From positions 62,001-126,000 of the IMG/VR virus record IMGVR_UViG_3300025319_000005: a stretch of DNA of 64,000 nucleotides. One strand, written 5' to 3'. Shown one piece after another: positions 48,691-57,026 of this stretch. How positions within the stretch are numbered: the first letter of the stretch is position 1; every line of letters starts with the position of its first letter. Made by a program: the position numbers and the translations under genes. A model generated the notes under the pieces. That model did not search any database. It saw only the letters and a program-made list of their open reading frames with translations, and was not told where the DNA came from.

Positions 48691-49216
48691 ACCAAAAAAC
48701 TATCCTTACATCATCCAAATTTCCAAGTTCTGACAATTCTTCAATATGTTTACAAAAAGTACCATCCGGACCACCAATAATGTCATAATAAGTTTTGTCT
48801 TCCCAATCTTCATCATACTCTCGTGGAAATGATATTTTTTCGAATATAACATTCCTTGAATTTGTAGAAAATTCCTGTTCTGGTGTTCTTAAATCTTGAT
48901 TAAAATCAAATTCAACCAATTCTCTAAGCGTTACAAAAGAAATAGTATGACCATCACCTTCCCATCCTATCCAGTTGCTTTTAACTGCAATAGAAACATC
49001 AATCGGCAATTTATAAGAAGGCTCTTTTATTGGTTTTACGTTACTTCTAACACCAGCTAAAAAACCAAACATACTATAAGAGCGCCAATCAAAAGGTGAA
49101 CTGGATTTTTCCGTATCAAAACTATATGATGGAGTAAAATGTTTACCGGTAAATAATTCCCATTTACATTTACCGTTTTTTCTTGTTTCAACGTGAATAT
49201 GAATATCAGCTCCCAT
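48680..49216 (-). CDS. phage hypothetical protein (MGADIH...RIVFWFDN)
   Basis: Recurrent phage-family termini; internal RNVIFEK. Confidence 0.8.
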   Translation of the reverse strand: MGADIHIHVETRKNGKCKWELFTGKHFTPSYSFDTEKSSSPFDWRSYSMFGFLAGVRSNVKPIKEPSYKLPIDVSIAVKSNWIGWEGDGHTISFVTLRELVEFDFNQDLRTPEQEFSTNSRNVIFEKISFPREYDEDWEDKTYYDIIGGPDGTFCKHIEELSELGNLDDVRIVFWFDN

Positions 49217-49902
49217 TATTTTAAAATATTTACTTTTTCAATTAAAACATTTCTTGAATATGTATTTGCTTTTAAAATATAATAGTTTAACATATCTTCA
49301 TATTTATCATGCTTTCTATCTAAATATACACTCGCATCTTTATATAACCAATTTAAAATACTCATAATTTGTTGATTACCTTTTTTATAAACTCTATATA
49401 TCATTTTCATTTTTCCATATCCAAGGACAATATTTGTTTCTTTCAAAAATATATCATAAATTTTTTTCATAAGCTGTTCAGTTCCAACAATACTAAATTG
49501 ATAACGTCTATAATTTTTATCCATCGTATAACAAATAGAACCATCTCCATCAAACAAACCTCTAATAAAATGCCTATATAAATGCTCTTTTATAATAGGA
49601 AATTTAGCTATTTTACTTTTTCTTGGAACGACTCCATAGTTGTTTAAATTGTTTATTATTTCTTTTTTTGTACAACTGAAATAATATATAGGCCCAAATC
49701 CATGGTCTGTAATTGAAATTGGTTTTTCATCTATATAAATTAATTTAGATAACTTTTCTAAGTGTCCCTTATCTTTAATATTAACTCTTAAATTCTTATT
49801 TCCAATATTACAACCATCAGCAAGAATAAATCCTAACCAATATGCTTCTTCTTCTGTATTTATATTTTTAAATACATTTTTGTTATATTCATATTTTTTC
49901 AT
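49216..49902 (-). CDS. LAGLIDADG homing endonuclease
   Basis: AYWLGFILADG and HFIRGLFDGDG; YLDRK; extra C-terminal RNVLIEK. Confidence 0.9.
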   Translation of the reverse strand: MKKYEYNKNVFKNINTEEEAYWLGFILADGCNIGNKNLRVNIKDKGHLEKLSKLIYIDEKPISITDHGFGPIYYFSCTKKEIINNLNNYGVVPRKSKIAKFPIIKEHLYRHFIRGLFDGDGSICYTMDKNYRRYQFSIVGTEQLMKKIYDIFLKETNIVLGYGKMKMIYRVYKKGNQQIMSILNWLYKDASVYLDRKHDKYEDMLNYYILKANTYSRNVLIEKVNILK

Positions 49903-50085
49903 GTTAATAAATATGGAAAAAATAATTAGTTACAACCCATCACAACCCACAATAACAATTAAACATAATTTGTGTTTTTTTTTCTTGCAAATGTAAAAAA
50001 AAAATTTGATAATATTTATTAAAAGCTAATAAAAATAGCAAAGATATTTAAGATACGACTTAGGAGTTCCAAAAAACATAGAGAC

Positions 50086-51642
50086 TTATAGAAAGAGCAT
50101 AGTTTTCACTTTGCTTTTTTCTGTTTTATTCTGTGCGTTTTGCTGAAACAAATAATTGTTCTTATTTGCCCTACGAACACTCTTCTTCGTAAGTTGGAGG
50201 CGTTTACACATTTCTTTCCAAGAACTTATGTTCTGTAATTCGTTATAATCCATCTGTGTGATATTACTCACGTTGGTTATAACTCCTTCATGGAAAGAAG
50301 GCATAAACTTTCCTCCTTTAATATATTTTATCATCCCTCTCCTACAAATCTCAATGCTTGCTGCGATTGGATCAAATGTATTATAATTTATATTTCCGAT
50401 AAAACTCGAATAACATGGGTTTATCTCAATCTTCTTTATTCCATAAAATGAACACCACTTATCTGAAAGTTGAGCAATTAAATTTCGACACCAGATATTG
50501 TTTATCTGTCTATTTGAATTCTTATTTCCATTGTCTTTACCAGAAATGTTGGTTAGTTCCTCAATAACAAAATTACACGTATGATAATGTTCTAGTTCTG
50601 AAAAAAGATTTTTTATTGCAATTGACAATTCATGTTTTCTTTTGTCTGAAGACACTTCTTTTTCTGAGAGTTTTACGAAATCAATAAATCCTTTTTTTAT
50701 TATCTTAAAATCACCTTCCAATGAACTACTTAATTCATTTTTGTCACAAATTGAATAACCGATTCCTTTTGGATTTAAATCTATTCCACAATATCTATTT
50801 TGCATTTTTATACCAAACATGCGTTGTTCGTGATCTCTGTGTGCTTGTGAAATAAGTTGTTTTCGTTCGGTTTTATCTGTAACGTGTTTTATGTCTTTAT
50901 AGAGTTGTTTTTCGTTAAACCATTTTCCACTAATCCTACTTTCTTCATATGTGATACAAATGTATGTTGAAGTCAATTTAATTGTAACAGGTATTTCTTT
51001 TTGCTGACACAACAAAGCAATAATTTTTAATATTCCTTTTTGTTTTTGTGTTGCATAAAACGAAATGTTAACTTTTCTTTTTGAATTTTCATATTTAAAA
51101 ATAACATTTCCATTTCCGAGTTCTTTTAAATTAAAAAAACGGTTACCTTTGCTGGCTGAATCTCCATAAAAAGTAATTGGCAACAATCTATTTTCTTTAA
51201 ATTTCTGTTTGTTTTTTAAATATAATTCTGGATTAGAAATCTTTTGTTTTGTTATAACTTGCAATAATTTTCTCCCGCCAAAAACAACATTCAAATTTAA
51301 AGACTTGTTTAAAGAAGAAATTTTTCTTTGCAATTTTTTCTTTAAATTTGGTTTTGTTTCGTTTTTAAGTTTTTCATGCAATTTAATAATATTCTTGTTA
51401 ATCCTTTCTTTGTTGGATTTCTCTCGTTCTTTAAAAGCGATTACTTCTTTTATAAGATAACTATATGCTTTATTTGAGTGAATGTGTTTAGAAATAATTT
51501 CATCGATAAAATTCTTATCCTCAATTAACTCAATATTGCGATACATTTTTCTGAAGGCAATCGAATATTGTTTTTGTAAAGAAATGATAAACTCTTTGTC
51601 TTCTTGATTGATGTTTGTTATTTTGAGTTTAAGGGTTAACAT
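50086..51642 (-). CDS. tnpB: TnpB-like RNA-guided RuvC nuclease
   Basis: VVFGGR, GNRFF, GIDLNP, VIEEL, INPCYSSFIG, DPIAASIEICRRG; D/E/D intact; no C4 Zn finger. Confidence 0.85.
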   Translation of the reverse strand: MLTLKLKITNINQEDKEFIISLQKQYSIAFRKMYRNIELIEDKNFIDEIISKHIHSNKAYSYLIKEVIAFKEREKSNKERINKNIIKLHEKLKNETKPNLKKKLQRKISSLNKSLNLNVVFGGRKLLQVITKQKISNPELYLKNKQKFKENRLLPITFYGDSASKGNRFFNLKELGNGNVIFKYENSKRKVNISFYATQKQKGILKIIALLCQQKEIPVTIKLTSTYICITYEESRISGKWFNEKQLYKDIKHVTDKTERKQLISQAHRDHEQRMFGIKMQNRYCGIDLNPKGIGYSICDKNELSSSLEGDFKIIKKGFIDFVKLSEKEVSSDKRKHELSIAIKNLFSELEHYHTCNFVIEELTNISGKDNGNKNSNRQINNIWCRNLIAQLSDKWCSFYGIKKIEINPCYSSFIGNINYNTFDPIAASIEICRRGMIKYIKGGKFMPSFHEGVITNVSNITQMDYNELQNISSWKEMCKRLQLTKKSVRRANKNNYLFQQNAQNKTEKSKVKTMLFL

Positions 51643-51645
51643 AAC

Positions 51646-51801
51646 TTATTTGTTATTGTTTTTTAAATCATTTTCCATAAATTGTCTAATCCGTTCAGAC
51701 ATATTATATTCATTATTCATACAAAAAATTCTATAATTATTTTTGAGATTTTTGTTAACTCGAATGATTAGCAATTTATTTTCTTTCTCTTTTGTTTTCA
51801 T
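51646..51801 (-). CDS. ribbon-helix-helix-like protein upstream of tnpB
   Basis: LLIIRVNKNLK...NMSERIRQFM; start reassigned. Confidence 0.7.
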   Translation of the reverse strand: MKTKEKENKLLIIRVNKNLKNNYRIFCMNNEYNMSERIRQFMENDLKNNNK

Positions 51802-51946
51802 GTCTATAAATATAAACAAAAAAATTAAAATCGCAATAAATAAATATTTTAAAGATAAATAAAATTTTGTAATATTTATTAAAGCCGATAGAAATGGCAA
51901 AGACATTCAAAATACAGCTTAGGCCGTTATTGTTGCAAAACAATAA

Positions 51947-51980
51947 AAATCCCATCCAGTTCGCTGCCGGATGGGATTTT
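51947..51980. terminator. Intrinsic terminator
   Basis: aaaatcccatcc...ggatgggatttt. Confidence 0.8.
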
Positions 51981-52003
51981 GCTTTATGGATATGTTTTAA
52001 ATC

Positions 52004-52432
52004 TTAAGATCTAAGAATATATTTTGCTATTTTTGAAGTCCGGCCACTTTTGTTTACAAAAGAATGAACGGATGTCTCAATATTCATTCCTCCTTTTTTT
52101 AAATCAAAAACAAGAGCTCCAAGTCTCAAAACTCCATATAATTCAATGGCTTCTAACACATTGATAGAACCTTTCTTCATAAGATGTTTAAGAACCATAT
52201 CATATTGAGAACTTGGTTTTACATATTTTTTAATAATTGTTTTTTTTGCTACCGGTGTTTTTAATGCTGGTCTTACTTTTGATAACATTTTTTTTGCTAC
52301 AGGCGCTTTTTTTGTTGTTGTAACTGATTTAGTTAAGCGATTTGCACTTTTCTTTAGTGGAGATTTTGTTGCTGCTTTTTTTAAGCGAGCTGGCTTTGCA
52401 GTTTTCGCACTGCTTTTAGTTGTTTTTTTCAT
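52004..52432 (-). CDS. winged-HTH protein with histone-H1-like Lys/Ala/Thr N-tail
   Basis: AKK/KKT repeats then SQ..VL.HL...GSI..LEA...YG..RL.A.V.DL. Confidence 0.8.
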   Translation of the reverse strand: MKKTTKSSAKTAKPARLKKAATKSPLKKSANRLTKSVTTTKKAPVAKKMLSKVRPALKTPVAKKTIIKKYVKPSSQYDMVLKHLMKKGSINVLEAIELYGVLRLGALVFDLKKGGMNIETSVHSFVNKSGRTSKIAKYILRS

Positions 52433-52559
52433 TGTTTTTTAGATTTGATTATTGATTGATATTTTATTATTGGCAGCTAAGATAATAATTTATTTGTTAT
52501 TTCCAGCAATTATGGTTAAATTCTTAAAAATTTAGCATATTTATATTAAAACTGACTAA

Positions 52560-52772
52560 ATGAAAAACTTTTTGATTAATTTATGGAAAGAATTATTTGG
52601 AAAAACACCAAATACAACAATAATTATACCTGCAGAAACTATTTCCGAAAAAACTATTGAAGTACATAAGGTTGATTGTGCTTGTAAAGAAAAAAAAGAA
52701 GTTAAAAAGGTGAAGCCAGTTAAAAAGACACAACCTGCAAAAATAGCTCCAAAAACAAAGAAGAAAAAGTGA
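52560..52772 (+). CDS. small basic protein
   Basis: TATTTATA upstream; Lys/Pro-rich tail. Confidence 0.6.
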   Translation: MKNFLINLWKELFGKTPNTTIIIPAETISEKTIEVHKVDCACKEKKEVKKVKPVKKTQPAKIAPKTKKKK

Positions 52773-53043
52773 TGTTAATCCATGTCCATGAACATATGTT
52801 CAGTGACAACACTGTCTGATAGTTCTTTATTTGCTCTTTTTGGAAATTTAATAATTCTTTTTCTCTGTTTATTATAATTTCAGCAATTTCTTTTTTTGGA
52901 AATGAAAGAGCTTTTGTTGGGTCATTTGTCCATCCTCTCATCGGAGAGTCTACTGTGTGATTGTGATTTTCTAAATCTAAACTCATAAAATACCATAATC
53001 TGGTTATTGAATTTTCTATAAAATATATGCAATTCGTTTCCAC
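52720..53043 (-). CDS. hypothetical protein
   Basis: Operon; GTG start. Confidence 0.5.
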   Translation of the reverse strand: METNCIYFIENSITRLWYFMSLDLENHNHTVDSPMRGWTNDPTKALSFPKKEIAEIIINREKELLNFQKEQIKNYQTVLSLNICSWTWINITFSSLFLELFLQVVSF

Positions 53044-54421: not shown

Positions 54422-54689
54422 GATTTTAATCTATTATCTTCCAGCAACAGCATATTTTGTTATTCCTATGAATTCTTTTTTTGCCCAATTATCAATTATT
54501 GATAATTCCTTGTCTGTTGGACGTTTATTATGTGGACCACGTATTTGCACTGCTCTACCATCTCTAACCTCTATAGTTACCATACTTATACCGAACAGTC
54601 TTAAAGAGAAAATTGAACATGACCATTTTAAACAAGAGCTTAAATAAGAATACACACAATGAGCCATACTTTTTCCCTCATCAGACACC

Positions 54690-56426
54690 TTAAACAATAG
54701 AAGATAGATATAAACATGATTCTTTTTGTTTTGTTTGTTTTGCATTCAAAACAAAAACATGTTTATCTATTTTGCTATGTCGAAGTTTCGCTGAACGAAG
54801 GTGAAAAAAAGTTGCCTCCTTTTCCTGTTCATCCAGCCACAAGTCTCGTAAAGACTTTCGGTATCTGAGTCCCGATAATTGGATTTTGTCGTGAAGTTCT
54901 TTCCAATTACAACACTCCTCCAATGCCTCAACATCTCGCAGAGAACCTGAGTTCATCCGTCTCATAGCGTGAAGACCAGTTTGTGATATACTTGGATAGA
55001 ATGTGCCTTTTGTGAATTTAAAAGCACCACGCCTACCAATTTCAATTGCCGCATTTACACAATCAACAAAGGAATTGTTTATGTTTCCTATAGTGGTTGA
55101 ATAAGCACAGTTTATTTCTAATTTTTTTATTCCAATTTTTGTGCAATAAGAATTAATTATCTCTTCGGAAAGAGTTCTGTGCCACACATTGTAAATCTGC
55201 CTGTTTGCTTCTTTTGGTTTATCATTTGAATCTTTTTTGTTGAAATTAAGTTCCTCACAAATGAAATATGCACACTTAAAGTATCTCGCTGTCTTAAACA
55301 CGTCTTTCCAAATGTGGCTTATTCCGTGTGTTCTTTTATTTGTTATGCAAGCTCGTTCTTCTTTTGTTGCTTCTTTTGGTGGGTTTGCATTAAGCTCTTT
55401 TAAGTCGTAATATGAGCCATGAACAAACGAAAAATCACCGGTATCGTTATTTTTATCTATTATTGCAACTCCAATATAATTGGGGTTTGAATCGTAAGCG
55501 ATATATCTGTTTTTATTTTTTCCAAACAACATTTTTTTATCCAACTCATTATAATGTTTTTTGTATATATTACTTATTAATTCTTTTGTTTGTTCTTTTG
55601 AAAGATTTTTCTTTTTTATATCTAAACATTCTTGCCTTCTTTTGGATTTATCGATATTAAATCCTTCCAAAATAGAGTCGTCATAAGCAATGGATATTGT
55701 TTTTGTTGACAAATAAACTGATAAAGATATTTCTTTTTTATCAGACATAGCCTGCAGTTCAGAAAGAAGATTTTTTCTTTTGTCAGAAAATTCTATTTTT
55801 ATTTTTTTGCCTTTTCCTGGTTTATAGATTATAATTCCATTGCATAAATCAAATGTAAAAAACCTATTTCCTTTTTGGTTTGATTCACCAAGAATGTATA
55901 AACTATTATTTCTTTGTTCTTGATATTCTTCTTTTGTTTTTGCTAATTTTCCTGCAAAATCTTGTTTTTTATCTTCTTCTTTTTCTGCTGAAACCATATT
56001 TGACAAATAAGAAATATACCTTAAATTTTCTTTGCCTCCGAAAGTGATGTCTTTTGGCATTAAAAAATTTAATTCCGAAAGTTTATTTTTGAGTTTGTAT
56101 AGTTTCTTTTTATTAAATTTATCTTGTTTTTTACCTTTTGCTTCTAATTTCTCAATTGATTTATTTATGTCAATAATTCGATTATTAACTTCTTCTTTGT
56201 TTGATAAAGTTTTTTTAAACAGGCTAATAACTTCTGAAGCAACGCTTCTGGATTCTATAAGATTTAATCCAAGATTATTTTTTGCAAAAGCAACAAGCTC
56301 TTCTTCTTTTGTATTTCCATTTGTCATTCGATATAGCACACGTTTCGCATGAGAATATTGCATTTGTTTTTCAGAAACAAATTCTTCATCAGAAAGCGAT
56401 TTTATATCTAATAGAATAGATTTCAT
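54690..56426 (-). CDS. tnpB: TnpB-like RuvC nuclease of IS607
   Basis: ITFGGK, GNRFF, AYDSNP, ICEEL, INCAYSTTIG, DCVNAAIEIGRRG. Confidence 0.85.
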   Translation of the reverse strand: MKSILLDIKSLSDEEFVSEKQMQYSHAKRVLYRMTNGNTKEEELVAFAKNNLGLNLIESRSVASEVISLFKKTLSNKEEVNNRIIDINKSIEKLEAKGKKQDKFNKKKLYKLKNKLSELNFLMPKDITFGGKENLRYISYLSNMVSAEKEEDKKQDFAGKLAKTKEEYQEQRNNSLYILGESNQKGNRFFTFDLCNGIIIYKPGKGKKIKIEFSDKRKNLLSELQAMSDKKEISLSVYLSTKTISIAYDDSILEGFNIDKSKRRQECLDIKKKNLSKEQTKELISNIYKKHYNELDKKMLFGKNKNRYIAYDSNPNYIGVAIIDKNNDTGDFSFVHGSYYDLKELNANPPKEATKEERACITNKRTHGISHIWKDVFKTARYFKCAYFICEELNFNKKDSNDKPKEANRQIYNVWHRTLSEEIINSYCTKIGIKKLEINCAYSTTIGNINNSFVDCVNAAIEIGRRGAFKFTKGTFYPSISQTGLHAMRRMNSGSLRDVEALEECCNWKELHDKIQLSGLRYRKSLRDLWLDEQEKEATFFHLRSAKLRHSKIDKHVFVLNAKQTKQKESCLYLSSIV

Positions 56427-57026
56427 TTATTTTTCTTGCAGTTCTTTTTTAAATTGATTTAATTTTCTTCTGTGTGAATAAGATTTCATAGAAAAATAAT
56501 GAATAATAGATACGAGGTCTTCCGTAAGTTCTTGTTCATAATTTTTTTCAACAGTTTGTGTTGCGACCACAATTTTTGTTCCAAAAAATCGACAGAAAGT
56601 CTCAAACAAATCAAAGCCAAACCTACAAAGCCTATCTTTGTGTTCTACTACAATATTGTCTATATTTCCTTTTATTACCTCTTCCAATAATTCGTTAAAA
56701 AATTTTCTATCAGAAAAATTCATTCCGGATTTAATATCCTGATATTGTTTATTAATAACAATTCCTTTACTTACGCAAAAATCCATTAATCTTTTTTCTT
56801 GAGAAATTAAATCATTTTTTTGTTTAGATAAGGAAACTCTTGAGTAAGTTACGTTTATTTTTTCTTTTTTTGTGTTTGACAAACCTATTAGTTTATATAC
56901 ATCTTCGTTGTCATACACATAATGATAAGGGTTAATAGCAACATATTTAATTATTCCTTTTTTAGAATAAGAATTTAATGTTTTTTGTGTAATTCCTAAG
57001 GTTTTTCTTACTTCTTTTGCTTTCAT
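56427..57026 (-). CDS. tnpA: IS607 serine transposase
   Basis: N-terminal HTH, YSRVS, QKNDL..Q, DIKSG, EHKDRLCRFGF, ELTEDL. Confidence 0.95.
   Translation of the reverse strand: MKAKEVRKTLGITQKTLNSYSKKGIIKYVAINPYHYVYDNEDVYKLIGLSNTKKEKINVTYSRVSLSKQKNDLISQEKRLMDFCVSKGIVINKQYQDIKSGMNFSDRKFFNELLEEVIKGNIDNIVVEHKDRLCRFGFDLFETFCRFFGTKIVVATQTVEKNYEQELTEDLVSIIHYFSMKSYSHRRKLNQFKKELQEK

What the first reader, a model, noticed from the sequence alone, without database searches (positions are those of the whole stretch)
50011..51923. Transposase-less RHH-TnpB unit whose presumptive guide region resembles its own upstream DNA
Seen: a 54-bp sequence starting ~20 bp after the tnpB stop recurs (44/54; substitutions are all transitions) 70-120 bp upstream of the RHH gene; RuvC D/E/D are intact. 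Known: TnpB guides derive from the sequence just 3' of the element. Inference: the guide could imperfectly target the unit's own promoter region (autoregulation) or an allelic site in competing phages; alternatively an old duplication.
Basis: partly seen in the sequence, partly recalled or inferred. Interest (0 to 1): 0.6.

Follow-up and report, generated by a model that had tools for sequence, protein, structure and literature searches.

The report
RHH-TnpB unit flanked by duplicated promoter
A jumbo-phage gene pair (a small DNA-binding repressor-like protein plus an RNA-guided nuclease of the TnpB kind, without its transposase) really is bracketed by two ~68-base look-alike sequences. The downstream copy sits exactly where the nuclease's guide RNA is templated, but the repeat looks like a duplicated promoter/left-end module rather than a device for self-targeting.

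Summary
On the minus strand lie an RHH-like gene (51646-51801) and a 518-aa TnpB-like gene (50086-51642). No third copy exists in the 212-kb phage.

Seventeen related loci place the conserved right end 22-23 nt after the stop codon (...GGAACTCC). D therefore starts exactly in the canonical guide position. A covarying omegaRNA-like structure ends there.

The similarity is far longer than a ~16-20 nt guide. It resumes in the leader and start codon of the next gene, a LAGLIDADG endonuclease. U follows a strong terminator and carries a promoter-like site. The predicted guide differs from U at positions 5, 6, 11, 14 and 18.

Best reading: this is an IS607-derived, zinc-finger-less phage TnpB whose serine transposase was replaced by an Arc-like RHH repressor. 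It sits next to a paralogous left-end/promoter module. Shared RHH control of both promoters and ordinary homing are more likely than RNA-guided autoregulation. It is a new variant of a known kind, of moderate interest.

The parts
51946..51980 (-). Intrinsic terminator-like hairpin (14 pairs followed by a T run) after the HTH_39 gene. It isolates the unit from upstream transcription.
51857..51923 (-). Copy U, the promoter/left-end-like module upstream of the RHH gene. It contains TTGCCA-18-AATATT and the palindrome TAATA-AA-TATTA. It is preceded by ...AACGG and begins with CC, the same dinucleotide that ends the right end.
51902..51921 (-). Near-cognate 'protospacer' inside U (TAAGCTGTATTTTGAATGTC). 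It differs from the predicted guide at positions 5, 6, 11, 14 and 18.
   Evidence: read directly from the sequence
51802..51823 (-). Leader with the T-run/TATATTTAT motif directly before the RHH ATG. The motif is shared with relatives' units and with the LAGLIDADG leader.
51646..51801 (-). 51-aa RHH (Arc/CopG-like) protein gene, 3 nt upstream of tnpB.
50086..51642 (-). 518-aa TnpB-like RNA-guided nuclease. It has D288/E361/D424 and no C4 zinc finger. The AF2 model has pLDDT 95.9.
50063..50228 (-). omegaRNA-scaffold-like conserved structured region: the last ~143 nt of tnpB plus the 23-nt right-end tail. It ends ...GGAACTCC.
50043..50062 (-). Predicted guide template (TAAGTCGTATCTTAAATATC), which is the first 20 nt of the 3' flank and of copy D.
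   Evidence: The guide length is inferred from ISDra2 (PMC8612924).
49997..50064 (-). Copy D, the paralog of U. It lies immediately 3' of the right end and upstream of the LAGLIDADG operon. It carries TTGCTA-19-AATATT and the same palindrome.
49900..49924 (-). Leader motif TATTTTTTCCATATTTATTAACATG before the LAGLIDADG ATG. It is the only other good match to the RHH leader motif in the genome.
49216..49902 (-). LAGLIDADG homing-endonuclease-like gene. It is the first gene of a tightly packed minus-strand operon driven from D.

Best explanation
The unit is a non-autonomous derivative of an IS607-type TnpB element. It belongs to a TnpB lineage that lacks the zinc finger and is abundant in jumbo phages. 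In this sub-branch the serine transposase gene has been replaced by a small Arc-like ribbon-helix-helix (RHH) gene.

How it is read (inferred). Transcription starts in U, which lies just behind a terminator. It runs through RHH and tnpB and over the conserved right end into D. The 3' part of that transcript folds into an omegaRNA scaffold ending ...GGAACUCC. The next ~16-20 nt (UAAGUCGUAUCUUAAAUAUC) would be the guide.

What D is. D is not a sequence evolved to match U. U plus its leader and D plus its leader are two paralogous copies of a family-type left-end/promoter/leader module. The second copy now heads the LAGLIDADG operon. The likeliest origin is that the RHH-tnpB unit landed at the TAM-proximal edge of a sibling left end. 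Both junctions carry CC followed by TAAG, as in IS607 core-dinucleotide recombination.

Likely consequences (inferred). The RHH dimer represses both promoters through the identical TAATAAATATTA-containing core. The guide specifies homing or retention cleavage of genomes that have '...GGCC + TAAGTCG...' without the unit. U escapes cleavage because of TAM-proximal mismatches.
For: Nuclease identity:
- TIGR01766 (TnpB-related) matches at E 4.6e-6.
- The AF2 model has pLDDT 95.9, with Z 14-15 to Cas12k, Cas12f and ISDra2 TnpB over residues 1-450.
- D288, E361 and D424 are invariant in 115 sequences.

Lineage:
- 746 clusters at 50% identity match at E <= 0.001.
- 80 loci in viral contigs were kept, often several per 100-370-kb phage.
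- Relatives at 45-49% identity are preceded by serine recombinases.
- A complete IS607-like paralog lies 3 kb away.
- Every relative at >=69% identity with upstream sequence on record has a 48-56-aa ORF in that position. Four had DNA to inspect and are RHH-like; they fall into three sequence types.

Right end and omegaRNA:
- Homology to L004, L006 and L095 stops at 50063/50064.
- In 17 loci the conserved tail ...TTCTAT..AACTCY is followed by unrelated flanks.
- A covariance model finds a single site in the window and also finds untrained relatives.
- 92.6% of cells are paired against 83.5% in shuffles and 44-60% in slid controls. Eight pairs show changes on both sides.

Promoter reading:
- A terminator lies at 51980-51946 and a sigma70-like site lies in U.
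- D precedes an operon whose genes overlap.

Paralogy beyond guide length:
- The core repeat is 68 nt, with a further 33-40 nt around both ATGs.
- The strict leader motif occurs at 0-1 mismatch only at these two genes in 212 kb.
- The looser T5-N1-6-TATTTA motif lies upstream of the first gene in 10 of 18 family elements, against 12 of 329 ORF starts in this genome.

Junctions: CC plus TAAG occurs at both junctions here. L007 has CC plus TAAA with a right end ending CC. L102 has CT plus TAAGTC with a right end ending CT.

Precedents:
- Arc RHH proteins repress the promoters of IS605-family elements, including arc+tnpB-only units and neighbours of homing endonucleases (bioRxiv 10.64898/2026.09.24.754181).
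- In IS607, the TAM and the omegaRNA end share the core dinucleotide (PMC10690162).
Against: - No RNA data exist. No RNA run holds the locus, so the transcript, the omegaRNA ends and the guide length are inferred.
- The left-end boundary is not resolved. L006 and L007 carry the same unit and 3' flank but differ upstream of -37.
- U and D show no significant similarity to relatives' upstream regions by shuffle tests, except L004 at z about 4. The nhmmer profile finds none either. 'U is the element's left end' therefore rests on short motifs chosen after the fact.
- No TnpB' or right-end' remnant lies downstream of the LAGLIDADG gene. The 'sibling element' is seen only as a solo left-end-like module.
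- RHH assignment is sub-threshold in Pfam (E 0.02-0.13).
- No empty-site allele was found.
Confidence: 0.55

Rival explanations
1. RNA-guided self-regulation. The omegaRNA guide templated by D pairs imperfectly with U. TnpB then binds, or weakly cuts, its own promoter or left-end junction and tunes expression of RHH-tnpB.
For: - D is exactly in the guide position.
- U has 15 of 20 identities to the predicted guide and is preceded by ...GGCC. That ends in the same CC as the scaffold end, so a TAM-like context is conceivable.
- All differences in that stretch are transitions.
- Nuclease-dead TnpB relatives are known to act as RNA-guided repressors (cited).
Against: - The catalytic triad is intact, so stable binding would mean cutting the phage's own genome.
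- Mismatches at guide positions 5, 6 and 11 fall in the TAM-proximal region. From my own knowledge of TnpB/Cas12 R-loop formation (not tested here), single mismatches there are poorly tolerated. Only position 5 would be a wobble.
- The similarity extends about 50 nt beyond any guide and into the leader, which guide-target matching does not require.
- No other RHH-type unit shows a 3'/5' flank match.
- A 98%-identical population carries a frameshifted tnpB with U intact, so the phage can do without the nuclease.
Confidence: 0.1
2. A neutral relic. U and D are an old local duplication or recombination scar (for example a single-crossover or one-ended recombination when the cassette entered). It has no present function beyond each copy serving, or not serving, as a promoter. 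The exact abutment to the right end would then follow only from where the cassette ends.
For: - The copies are only about 80% identical, while the phage population is nearly clonal here. That implies an old event.
- The repeat is unique to this locus.
- In another family member (L042) a flank repeat turned out to be pre-existing tandem paralogs.
Against: - The best-conserved blocks are those expected for -35/-10 elements and an operator: TCTTTGC and an identical 14-nt TTTAATAAATATTA.
- Both copies sit at operon starts, and U lies directly behind a terminator.
- The leader motif is specific to this family.
Confidence: 0.22
3. A toxin-antitoxin-like module. The RHH protein is an antitoxin that directly restrains a TnpB nuclease toxin, as proposed for archaeal RHH/MazE-TnpB pairs. 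The flank repeat would be irrelevant to this.
For: - RHH proteins are common antitoxins, and the two genes are 3 nt apart.
- RHH/MazE-TnpB pairs have been proposed as toxin-antitoxin systems (PMC10691335).
- Feature-based Atlas hits include a HicB/Arc antitoxin-like cluster.
Against: - The archaeal clade has a D-to-H change in RuvC-III and is immobile. Here D424 is kept, and relatives sit in different contexts with a conserved omegaRNA end.
- The 51-aa protein has no extension beyond the RHH domain that could contact a toxin.
Confidence: 0.08

Closest known systems
Arc (RHH)-containing IS605-family elements, including arc+tnpB-only units (Moon, Zedaveinyte, Wiegand, Sternberg, bioRxiv 2026, 10.64898/2026.09.24.754181)
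   Same: A small RHH gene sits next to tnpB inside a compact mobile unit. A promoter lies in the adjacent intergenic DNA. The paper also notes association with homing-endonuclease genes. The expected role is repression of the element's own promoter.
   Different: - Here the TnpB lineage is IS607-type: relatives carry serine recombinases, not Y1 TnpA.
- The protein lacks the zinc finger and is phage-borne.
- RHH and tnpB are co-directional in one operon.
- The RHH proteins are not detectably homologous to curated families at threshold.
- A second copy of the promoter module lies in the guide position.
IS607-family TnpB elements / CboIStron (Zedaveinyte et al., PMC10690162)
   Same: - The omegaRNA overlaps the tnpB 3' end and stops at the right end, and the guide comes from the 3' flank.
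- The right end and the 5' flank end in the same dinucleotide (CC here, GG there), while the bases before it differ (ACTCC against CGGCC here, TCGG against TGGG there).
- Close relatives have a serine TnpA.
   Different: This unit has no TnpA_S and no group I intron (Rfam found nothing). The TnpB has no zinc finger and is about 100 aa longer. The TAM is unknown.
RHH/MazE-TnpB and the RIIIr-4 clade (Altae-Tran et al. 2023, PMC10691335)
   Same: A small RHH gene lies directly upstream of tnpB. The C4 zinc finger is absent. The paper notes that the clade is represented in viruses.
   Different: In that group the RuvC-III Asp is replaced by His, and the RHH/MazE-linked members are archaeal and immobile. 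Here D424 is invariant, and the units are in phages and sit in varied contexts.
ISDra2 TnpB-reRNA (Karvelis et al. 2021, PMC8612924; PDB 8EXA/8H1J)
   Same: The fold matches (Z 12-14). The RNA derives from the tnpB 3' end plus the right end, with about 16 nt of flank as guide.
   Different: No significant sequence similarity was found: a family profile search of the PDB gave no hit. The REC region is larger, there is no zinc finger, and the partner gene differs.

Membership tests
TnpB / OMEGA RNA-guided nucleases | Split RuvC domain with the catalytic D...E...D and a WED/REC/RuvC fold | tested here: met
   D288, E361 and D424 are invariant in 115 sequences. The AF2 model has pLDDT 95.9. Z is 14-15 to Cas12k/Cas12f and 14.1 to ISDra2 TnpB over residues 1-450.
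TnpB / OMEGA RNA-guided nucleases | Match to curated sequence models at their cut-off (Pfam OrfB_IS605/OrfB_Zn_ribbon, NCBIfam TIGR01766) | tested here: not met
   Pfam gives no TnpB family. TIGR01766 scores 27 bits against a cut-off of 32, at E 4.6e-6. A family profile finds no PDB chain by sequence.
TnpB / OMEGA RNA-guided nucleases | C4 zinc finger between RuvC-II and RuvC-III | tested here: not met
   No CxxC pairs are present. The segment reads INPCYSSFIGNINYNTFDPIAASIEICRRG. This loss is known in some large TnpB branches (PMC10691335).
TnpB / OMEGA RNA-guided nucleases | Conserved structured RNA (omegaRNA) overlapping the 3' end of the gene and ending at the element's right end, with unrelated flank beyond | tested here: met
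   The right-end tail is conserved in 17 loci with divergent flanks. Covariance-model hits and covariation counts support the structure. Expression was not testable, because no RNA run holds the locus.
TnpB / OMEGA RNA-guided nucleases | TAM-dependent, guide-dependent DNA cleavage | not testable with these tools
   This needs a TAM library and an interference assay.
IS607-family insertion sequence | Serine recombinase TnpA encoded in the element | tested here: not met
   An RHH gene occupies that position. TnpA_S is present in relatives at 45-49% identity and in the neighbouring paralog.
IS607-family insertion sequence | The same core dinucleotide at the left and right junctions | tested here: inconclusive
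   CC precedes TAAG at both 51923/51922 and 50064/50063. L007 (CC) and L102 (CT) fit as well. However, the left-end boundary is not independently defined.
IS607-family insertion sequence | Copies in different genomic contexts (mobility) | tested here: met
   The window, L004 and L006/L095 share about 75% nucleotide identity inside the unit but have unrelated 3' flanks and neighbours.
Arc/RHH-regulated TnpB elements | Adjacent small protein with the ribbon-helix-helix fold | tested here: inconclusive
   Pfam RHH_10, RHH_1 and RHH_9 give only E 0.02-0.13 for all four small ORFs. Nearly all named feature-based Atlas hits are RHH families, with scores 0.90-0.93. No structure was predicted.
Arc/RHH-regulated TnpB elements | RHH binds and represses the element's promoter | not testable with these tools
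   Only a candidate operator is seen: the palindrome TAATA-AA-TATTA, identical in U and D and overlapping the -10-like hexamer.
RHH/MazE-TnpB (RIIIr-4, archaeal TA-like) | RuvC-III Asp replaced by His; immobile archaeal loci | tested here: not met
   D424 is invariant. The loci are phage contigs in varied contexts.
TldR-type nuclease-dead TnpB repressors | Loss of RuvC catalytic residues | tested here: not met
   The triad is intact.

The most novel reading that the evidence does not exclude
The guide is not an accident of position. The unit is programmed against the TAM-plus-left-end junction of a sibling element. It would cut genomes that carry the sibling (LAGLIDADG-headed) module alone and so drive itself in front of it. 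Its own left end would be protected by transition mismatches at seed positions. That would be RNA-guided competition, or hitch-hiking, between related selfish elements in a jumbo phage, with one RHH protein controlling both promoters.
Probability: 0.12. Interest if true: 0.7.

Novelty: new variant of a known kind. Interest (0 to 1): 0.4.

Why it matters
The locus documents a phage-rich TnpB lineage that lacks the zinc finger and is invisible to Pfam. In one sub-branch the IS607 serine transposase has been replaced by Arc-like RHH genes. This extends the recently described Arc-TnpB partnership from IS605 to IS607-type, virus-borne elements.

The conserved right end and the covariance model give a ready definition of the scaffold and guide for a compact nuclease, which is 518 aa with a confident predicted model.

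The arrangement also offers a natural experiment in a single locus. It contains a perfect target (D, shielded by the right end) and a near-cognate target (U, behind a possible TAM). This could be used to measure mismatch tolerance and self/non-self discrimination, and to test whether one RHH repressor couples a TnpB unit to a neighbouring homing endonuclease operon.

Tried and rejected
- Rfam scan of 49000-53000 at E <= 1 found nothing: no known omegaRNA family and no group I intron.
- The single-protein scan of viral contigs found no relatives. The alignment-based scans worked.
- The homolog search with the 51-aa RHH returned only itself.
- The HTH_39 neighbour found only 38%-identical loci, so no syntenic phage or empty site was obtained.
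- Exact searches for the first 20-27 nt of D or U gave no match in viral contigs or genome contigs.
- No RNA runs hold the locus. The contigs laid from four DNA runs were low-depth fragments of the same arrangement and showed no informative joints.
- Complex prediction on TnpB plus two RHH copies gave no verdict (score 0.01). It counts neither for nor against binding.
- The idea that flank repeats are a general feature of the family was rejected. Among 38 distinct loci only L042 scored higher, and there the repeat comes from a tandem paralog array that the TnpB interrupted; a related phage, L155, lacks the TnpB.
- The idea that U/D is a common phage promoter was rejected. There is no third copy in 212 kb.
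- The hairpin just before the stop codon is consistent only in one subgroup.
- Stop-codon recoding, considered as an explanation for the short ORFs at 9-30 kb, was rejected.
- A right-end-like motif downstream of the LAGLIDADG gene (48928-48947, 3 mismatches) is within chance expectation.
- DNA of the 82%-identical relative P0002 could not be fetched.
Full report
CONTEXT. The window is bases 62001-126000 of a 212,632-bp viral contig, estimated about 81% complete, with 24-33% GC. Near-identical copies occur in sediment, soil and groundwater metagenomes, and the TnpB protein cluster is on record on contigs up to 503 kb. The standard genetic code applies. All genes discussed here are on the minus strand.

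OBSERVATION. A 51-aa ORF (51646-51801) is followed 3 nt later by a 518-aa ORF (50086-51642). Read in gene orientation, a sequence starting CCTAAG at 51923 (copy U) recurs starting CCTAAG at 50064 (copy D). Across the full ~68 nt there are 55 matches. The alignment scores 69 against 26-31 (sd about 5) for shuffles, and no shuffle reaches it. A profile of the two copies finds nothing else in the genome or in about 150 related loci. A second block of similarity covers the two leaders and start codons, RHH at 51788-51827 and LAGLIDADG at 49889-49928.

WHAT THE PROTEINS ARE. Pfam does not recognise the 518-aa protein. NCBIfam TIGR01766 (TnpB-related) matches below its cut-off, at 27 bits against 32, E 4.6e-6. 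Exhaustive HMMER search finds 746 clusters at 50% identity. The word-indexed search finds 255 proteins, several of which JGI names IS605 OrfB. An alignment of 115 members shows invariant D288 (IDLNP), E361 and D424 (DPIAASIEI.RRG), and no CxxC zinc finger. AlphaFold2 gives pLDDT 95.9. The best structural matches are Cas12k, Cas12f and ISDra2 TnpB, at Z 14-15 with about 300 aligned residues. A sequence profile finds no PDB chain. The protein is thus a divergent TnpB that lacks the zinc finger. The family is frequent in large phages, often with several copies per genome.

The small protein has only sub-threshold Pfam hits to RHH families. The same holds for the three other small proteins found in the same position in relatives. 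Feature-based Atlas neighbours with a named family are nearly all RHH families, including ParG, RepB-RCR_reg, RHH_1, Arc, RHH_5 and RHH_3. RHH is the reasonable call, but it is not proven.

LINEAGE AND ARCHITECTURE. Relatives at 45-49% identity (L098, L099, L100, L102, L144) are preceded by a MerR-HTH/resolvase serine recombinase, which is the IS607 organisation. A complete IS607-like paralog lies 3 kb away: TnpA at 56427-57026 and TnpB at 54690-56426, 35% identical. Every relative at >=69% identity with upstream sequence on record (P0002, P0003/L006/L007, L096, P0005/L004) has a 48-56-aa ORF instead. Those with DNA to inspect fall into three different RHH-like sequence types. RHH-like ORFs also precede distant members L106/L108 and L107. 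In this sub-branch, then, the transposase has been replaced by a small DNA-binding protein.

RIGHT END, omegaRNA AND GUIDE POSITION. Nucleotide homology (about 75%) between the window and L004, L006 and L095 stops at 50063/50064. In 17 loci the stop codon is followed by a conserved tail, WWTTCTATNTNTNTTNNAACTC[Y], after which the flanks are unrelated. RNAalifold predicts three helices in the last ~140 nt of the gene. A covariance model built from 15 loci finds one site in the window (50063-50228) and also finds untrained relatives L146, L144, L145, L115 and L106. On the resulting alignment 92.6% of cells pair, against 83.5% in shuffles and 44-60% when partners are slid. Eight pairs change on both sides. 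That alignment is fitted to the model, which inflates these figures somewhat.

This is the TnpB/omegaRNA anatomy described for ISDra2, where about 150 nt come from the gene's 3' end plus the right end, followed by about 16 nt of flank (PMC8612924). It also matches IS607 elements (PMC10690162). The first 16-20 nt of D (50062-50043, TAAGTCGTATCTTAAATATC) are therefore the predicted guide template.

WHY THE REPEAT IS PROBABLY NOT A GUIDE-TARGET DEVICE.
(i) The similarity spans about 68 nt and resumes at the leader and ATG. A guide needs only 16-20 nt.
(ii) The guide differs from U at positions 5, 6, 11, 14 and 18, and only position 5 would be an rU-dG wobble. From general knowledge of TnpB and Cas12, which was not tested here, TAM-proximal mismatches block R-loop formation.
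(iii) The nuclease is predicted to be active, so stable pairing would cut the phage's own DNA.
(iv) L004, L006 and L007 show no 5'/3' flank similarity. Among 38 distinct family loci only L042 scored higher. There the repeat is a tandem paralog array interrupted by the TnpB, as the TnpB-free relative L155 shows, and the repeat does not begin at the right end.
(v) A 98%-identical population (L097) has tnpB broken by a 91-nt frameshifting deletion while U is unchanged.

WHAT U AND D MOST LIKELY ARE. U lies between a strong terminator (51980-51946) and the RHH gene and contains TTGCCA-18-AATATT. D has the same hexamers with a 19-nt spacer. It precedes the LAGLIDADG gene, whose stop overlaps the start of the next gene in a packed operon. 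The best-conserved blocks are TCTTTGC and an identical 14-nt TTTAATAAATATTA that contains the palindrome TAATA-AA-TATTA.

The strict leader motif (TTTTTTNNNNATATTTATNRAYATG) matches at 0-1 mismatch only before the RHH and LAGLIDADG genes in the whole genome. A looser form (T5-N1-6-TATTTA) lies within 60 nt upstream of the first gene in 10 of 18 family elements, against 12 of 329 ORF starts in this genome. L004's upstream region resembles the U/D core at z about 4. D plus its leader therefore looks like the 5' module of a sibling unit, and that module now heads the LAGLIDADG operon.

Both junctions read CC followed by TAAG (...AACGGCC|TAAGCTG and ...GGAACTCC|TAAGTCG). L007 reads CC|TAAA with a right end ending in CC. 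L102 reads CT|TAAGTC with a right end ending in CT. In IS607 elements the core dinucleotide is likewise shared by the TAM side and the scaffold end, while the preceding bases differ, which prevents self-cleavage (PMC10690162). This fits insertion of the unit at the TAM-proximal edge of a sibling left end. However, the left-end boundary is not independently established, and profile and shuffle tests do not detect U/D in relatives. A target duplication at insertion remains possible.

MECHANISM PROPOSED. Shown: the anatomy, the right end, the covarying RNA, the intact triad, the repeat and its promoter-like setting. Inferred: U drives RHH-tnpB; the read-through transcript yields an omegaRNA with a D-derived guide; TnpB uses it for homing or retention at genomes that have the TAM directly joined to TAAGTCG...; and the RHH dimer represses U and also D through the shared core. 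The last point follows the precedent of Arc proteins of IS605-family elements. These bind and repress the element's promoter, occur in arc+tnpB-only units and are found next to homing endonucleases (bioRxiv 10.64898/2026.09.24.754181).

COMPARISON AND NOVELTY. RHH-TnpB pairs are already known: Arc in IS605 elements, and archaeal RHH/MazE-TnpB with a His in RuvC-III (PMC10691335). Loss of the zinc finger and enrichment in viruses are also described for some TnpB branches. Three things are new here. The pairing sits in an IS607-derived phage lineage with a canonical triad. RHH genes have repeatedly taken the place of the serine transposase. And a paralog of the unit's own promoter module occupies the guide slot, which is so far seen at this locus only. 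I rate it a new variant of a known kind, with interest 0.4.

Noticed in passing
window 54690-57026 (-): A complete IS607-like element lies here. It has a 199-aa MerR-HTH/serine recombinase TnpA (56427-57026) and a 578-aa TnpB (54690-56426) that is 35% identical to the 518-aa protein. It could supply transposase in trans. The omegaRNA model R1 does not hit its 3' end.
   Followed up: partly
window 54434-54745 (-): A 103-aa ORF, called PcfJ-like in a public gene call, overlaps the 3' end of the second tnpB. It may be a spurious call over that element's omegaRNA/right-end region.
   Followed up: no
L097 (98% identical contig); corresponds to window about 50534-50624 and a site in the WED region: A variant population carries a 27-nt in-frame deletion and a 91-nt frameshifting deletion between 18-nt direct repeats. 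These truncate TnpB before RuvC-II. The RHH gene and copy U are intact.
   Followed up: yes
L042 2459-2618 and 4723-4882; L155: In a group of ~200-kb phages a small ORF plus TnpB is flanked by a diverged 160-nt repeat. The related phage L155 has three tandem paralogs and no TnpB at that place. The repeat is therefore a pre-existing paralog array, and L155 serves as an empty-site-like comparison. It places that element's right end about 34 nt after the stop codon.
   Followed up: yes
L106/L108 1017-1190; L107 696-899: RHH-like small ORFs (57 and 67 aa) also precede TnpBs that are only 34-35% identical to the window's. The RHH-TnpB arrangement therefore recurs across this phage family.
   Followed up: partly
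window 52004-52432 (-): The HTH_39 winged-helix protein has a long Lys/Ala/Pro/Thr-rich basic N-terminal tail, encoded partly by 48-nt tandem DNA repeats (52240-52325). It may be a histone-H1-like phage DNA-binding protein.
   Followed up: no
window 49216-49902 (-): A free-standing LAGLIDADG homing-endonuclease-like gene (phrog_4645, E 1e-50) lies directly downstream of the TnpB unit. Two different selfish nuclease genes are thus adjacent. No homolog of it was seen in any related TnpB locus.
   Followed up: partly
window 51830-51889: An imperfect 24-nt inverted repeat (75% complementary) brackets the junction between U's -10 region and the RHH leader. D lacks the second arm. It could be an extended operator or a 5' RNA hairpin, but it could also be chance in AT-rich DNA.
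   Followed up: no
window 9000-30000: There are very few ORFs longer than 150 aa. Reading TAG or TGA as sense does not lengthen them, so this is a region of many small genes rather than of recoded stop codons.
   Followed up: yes
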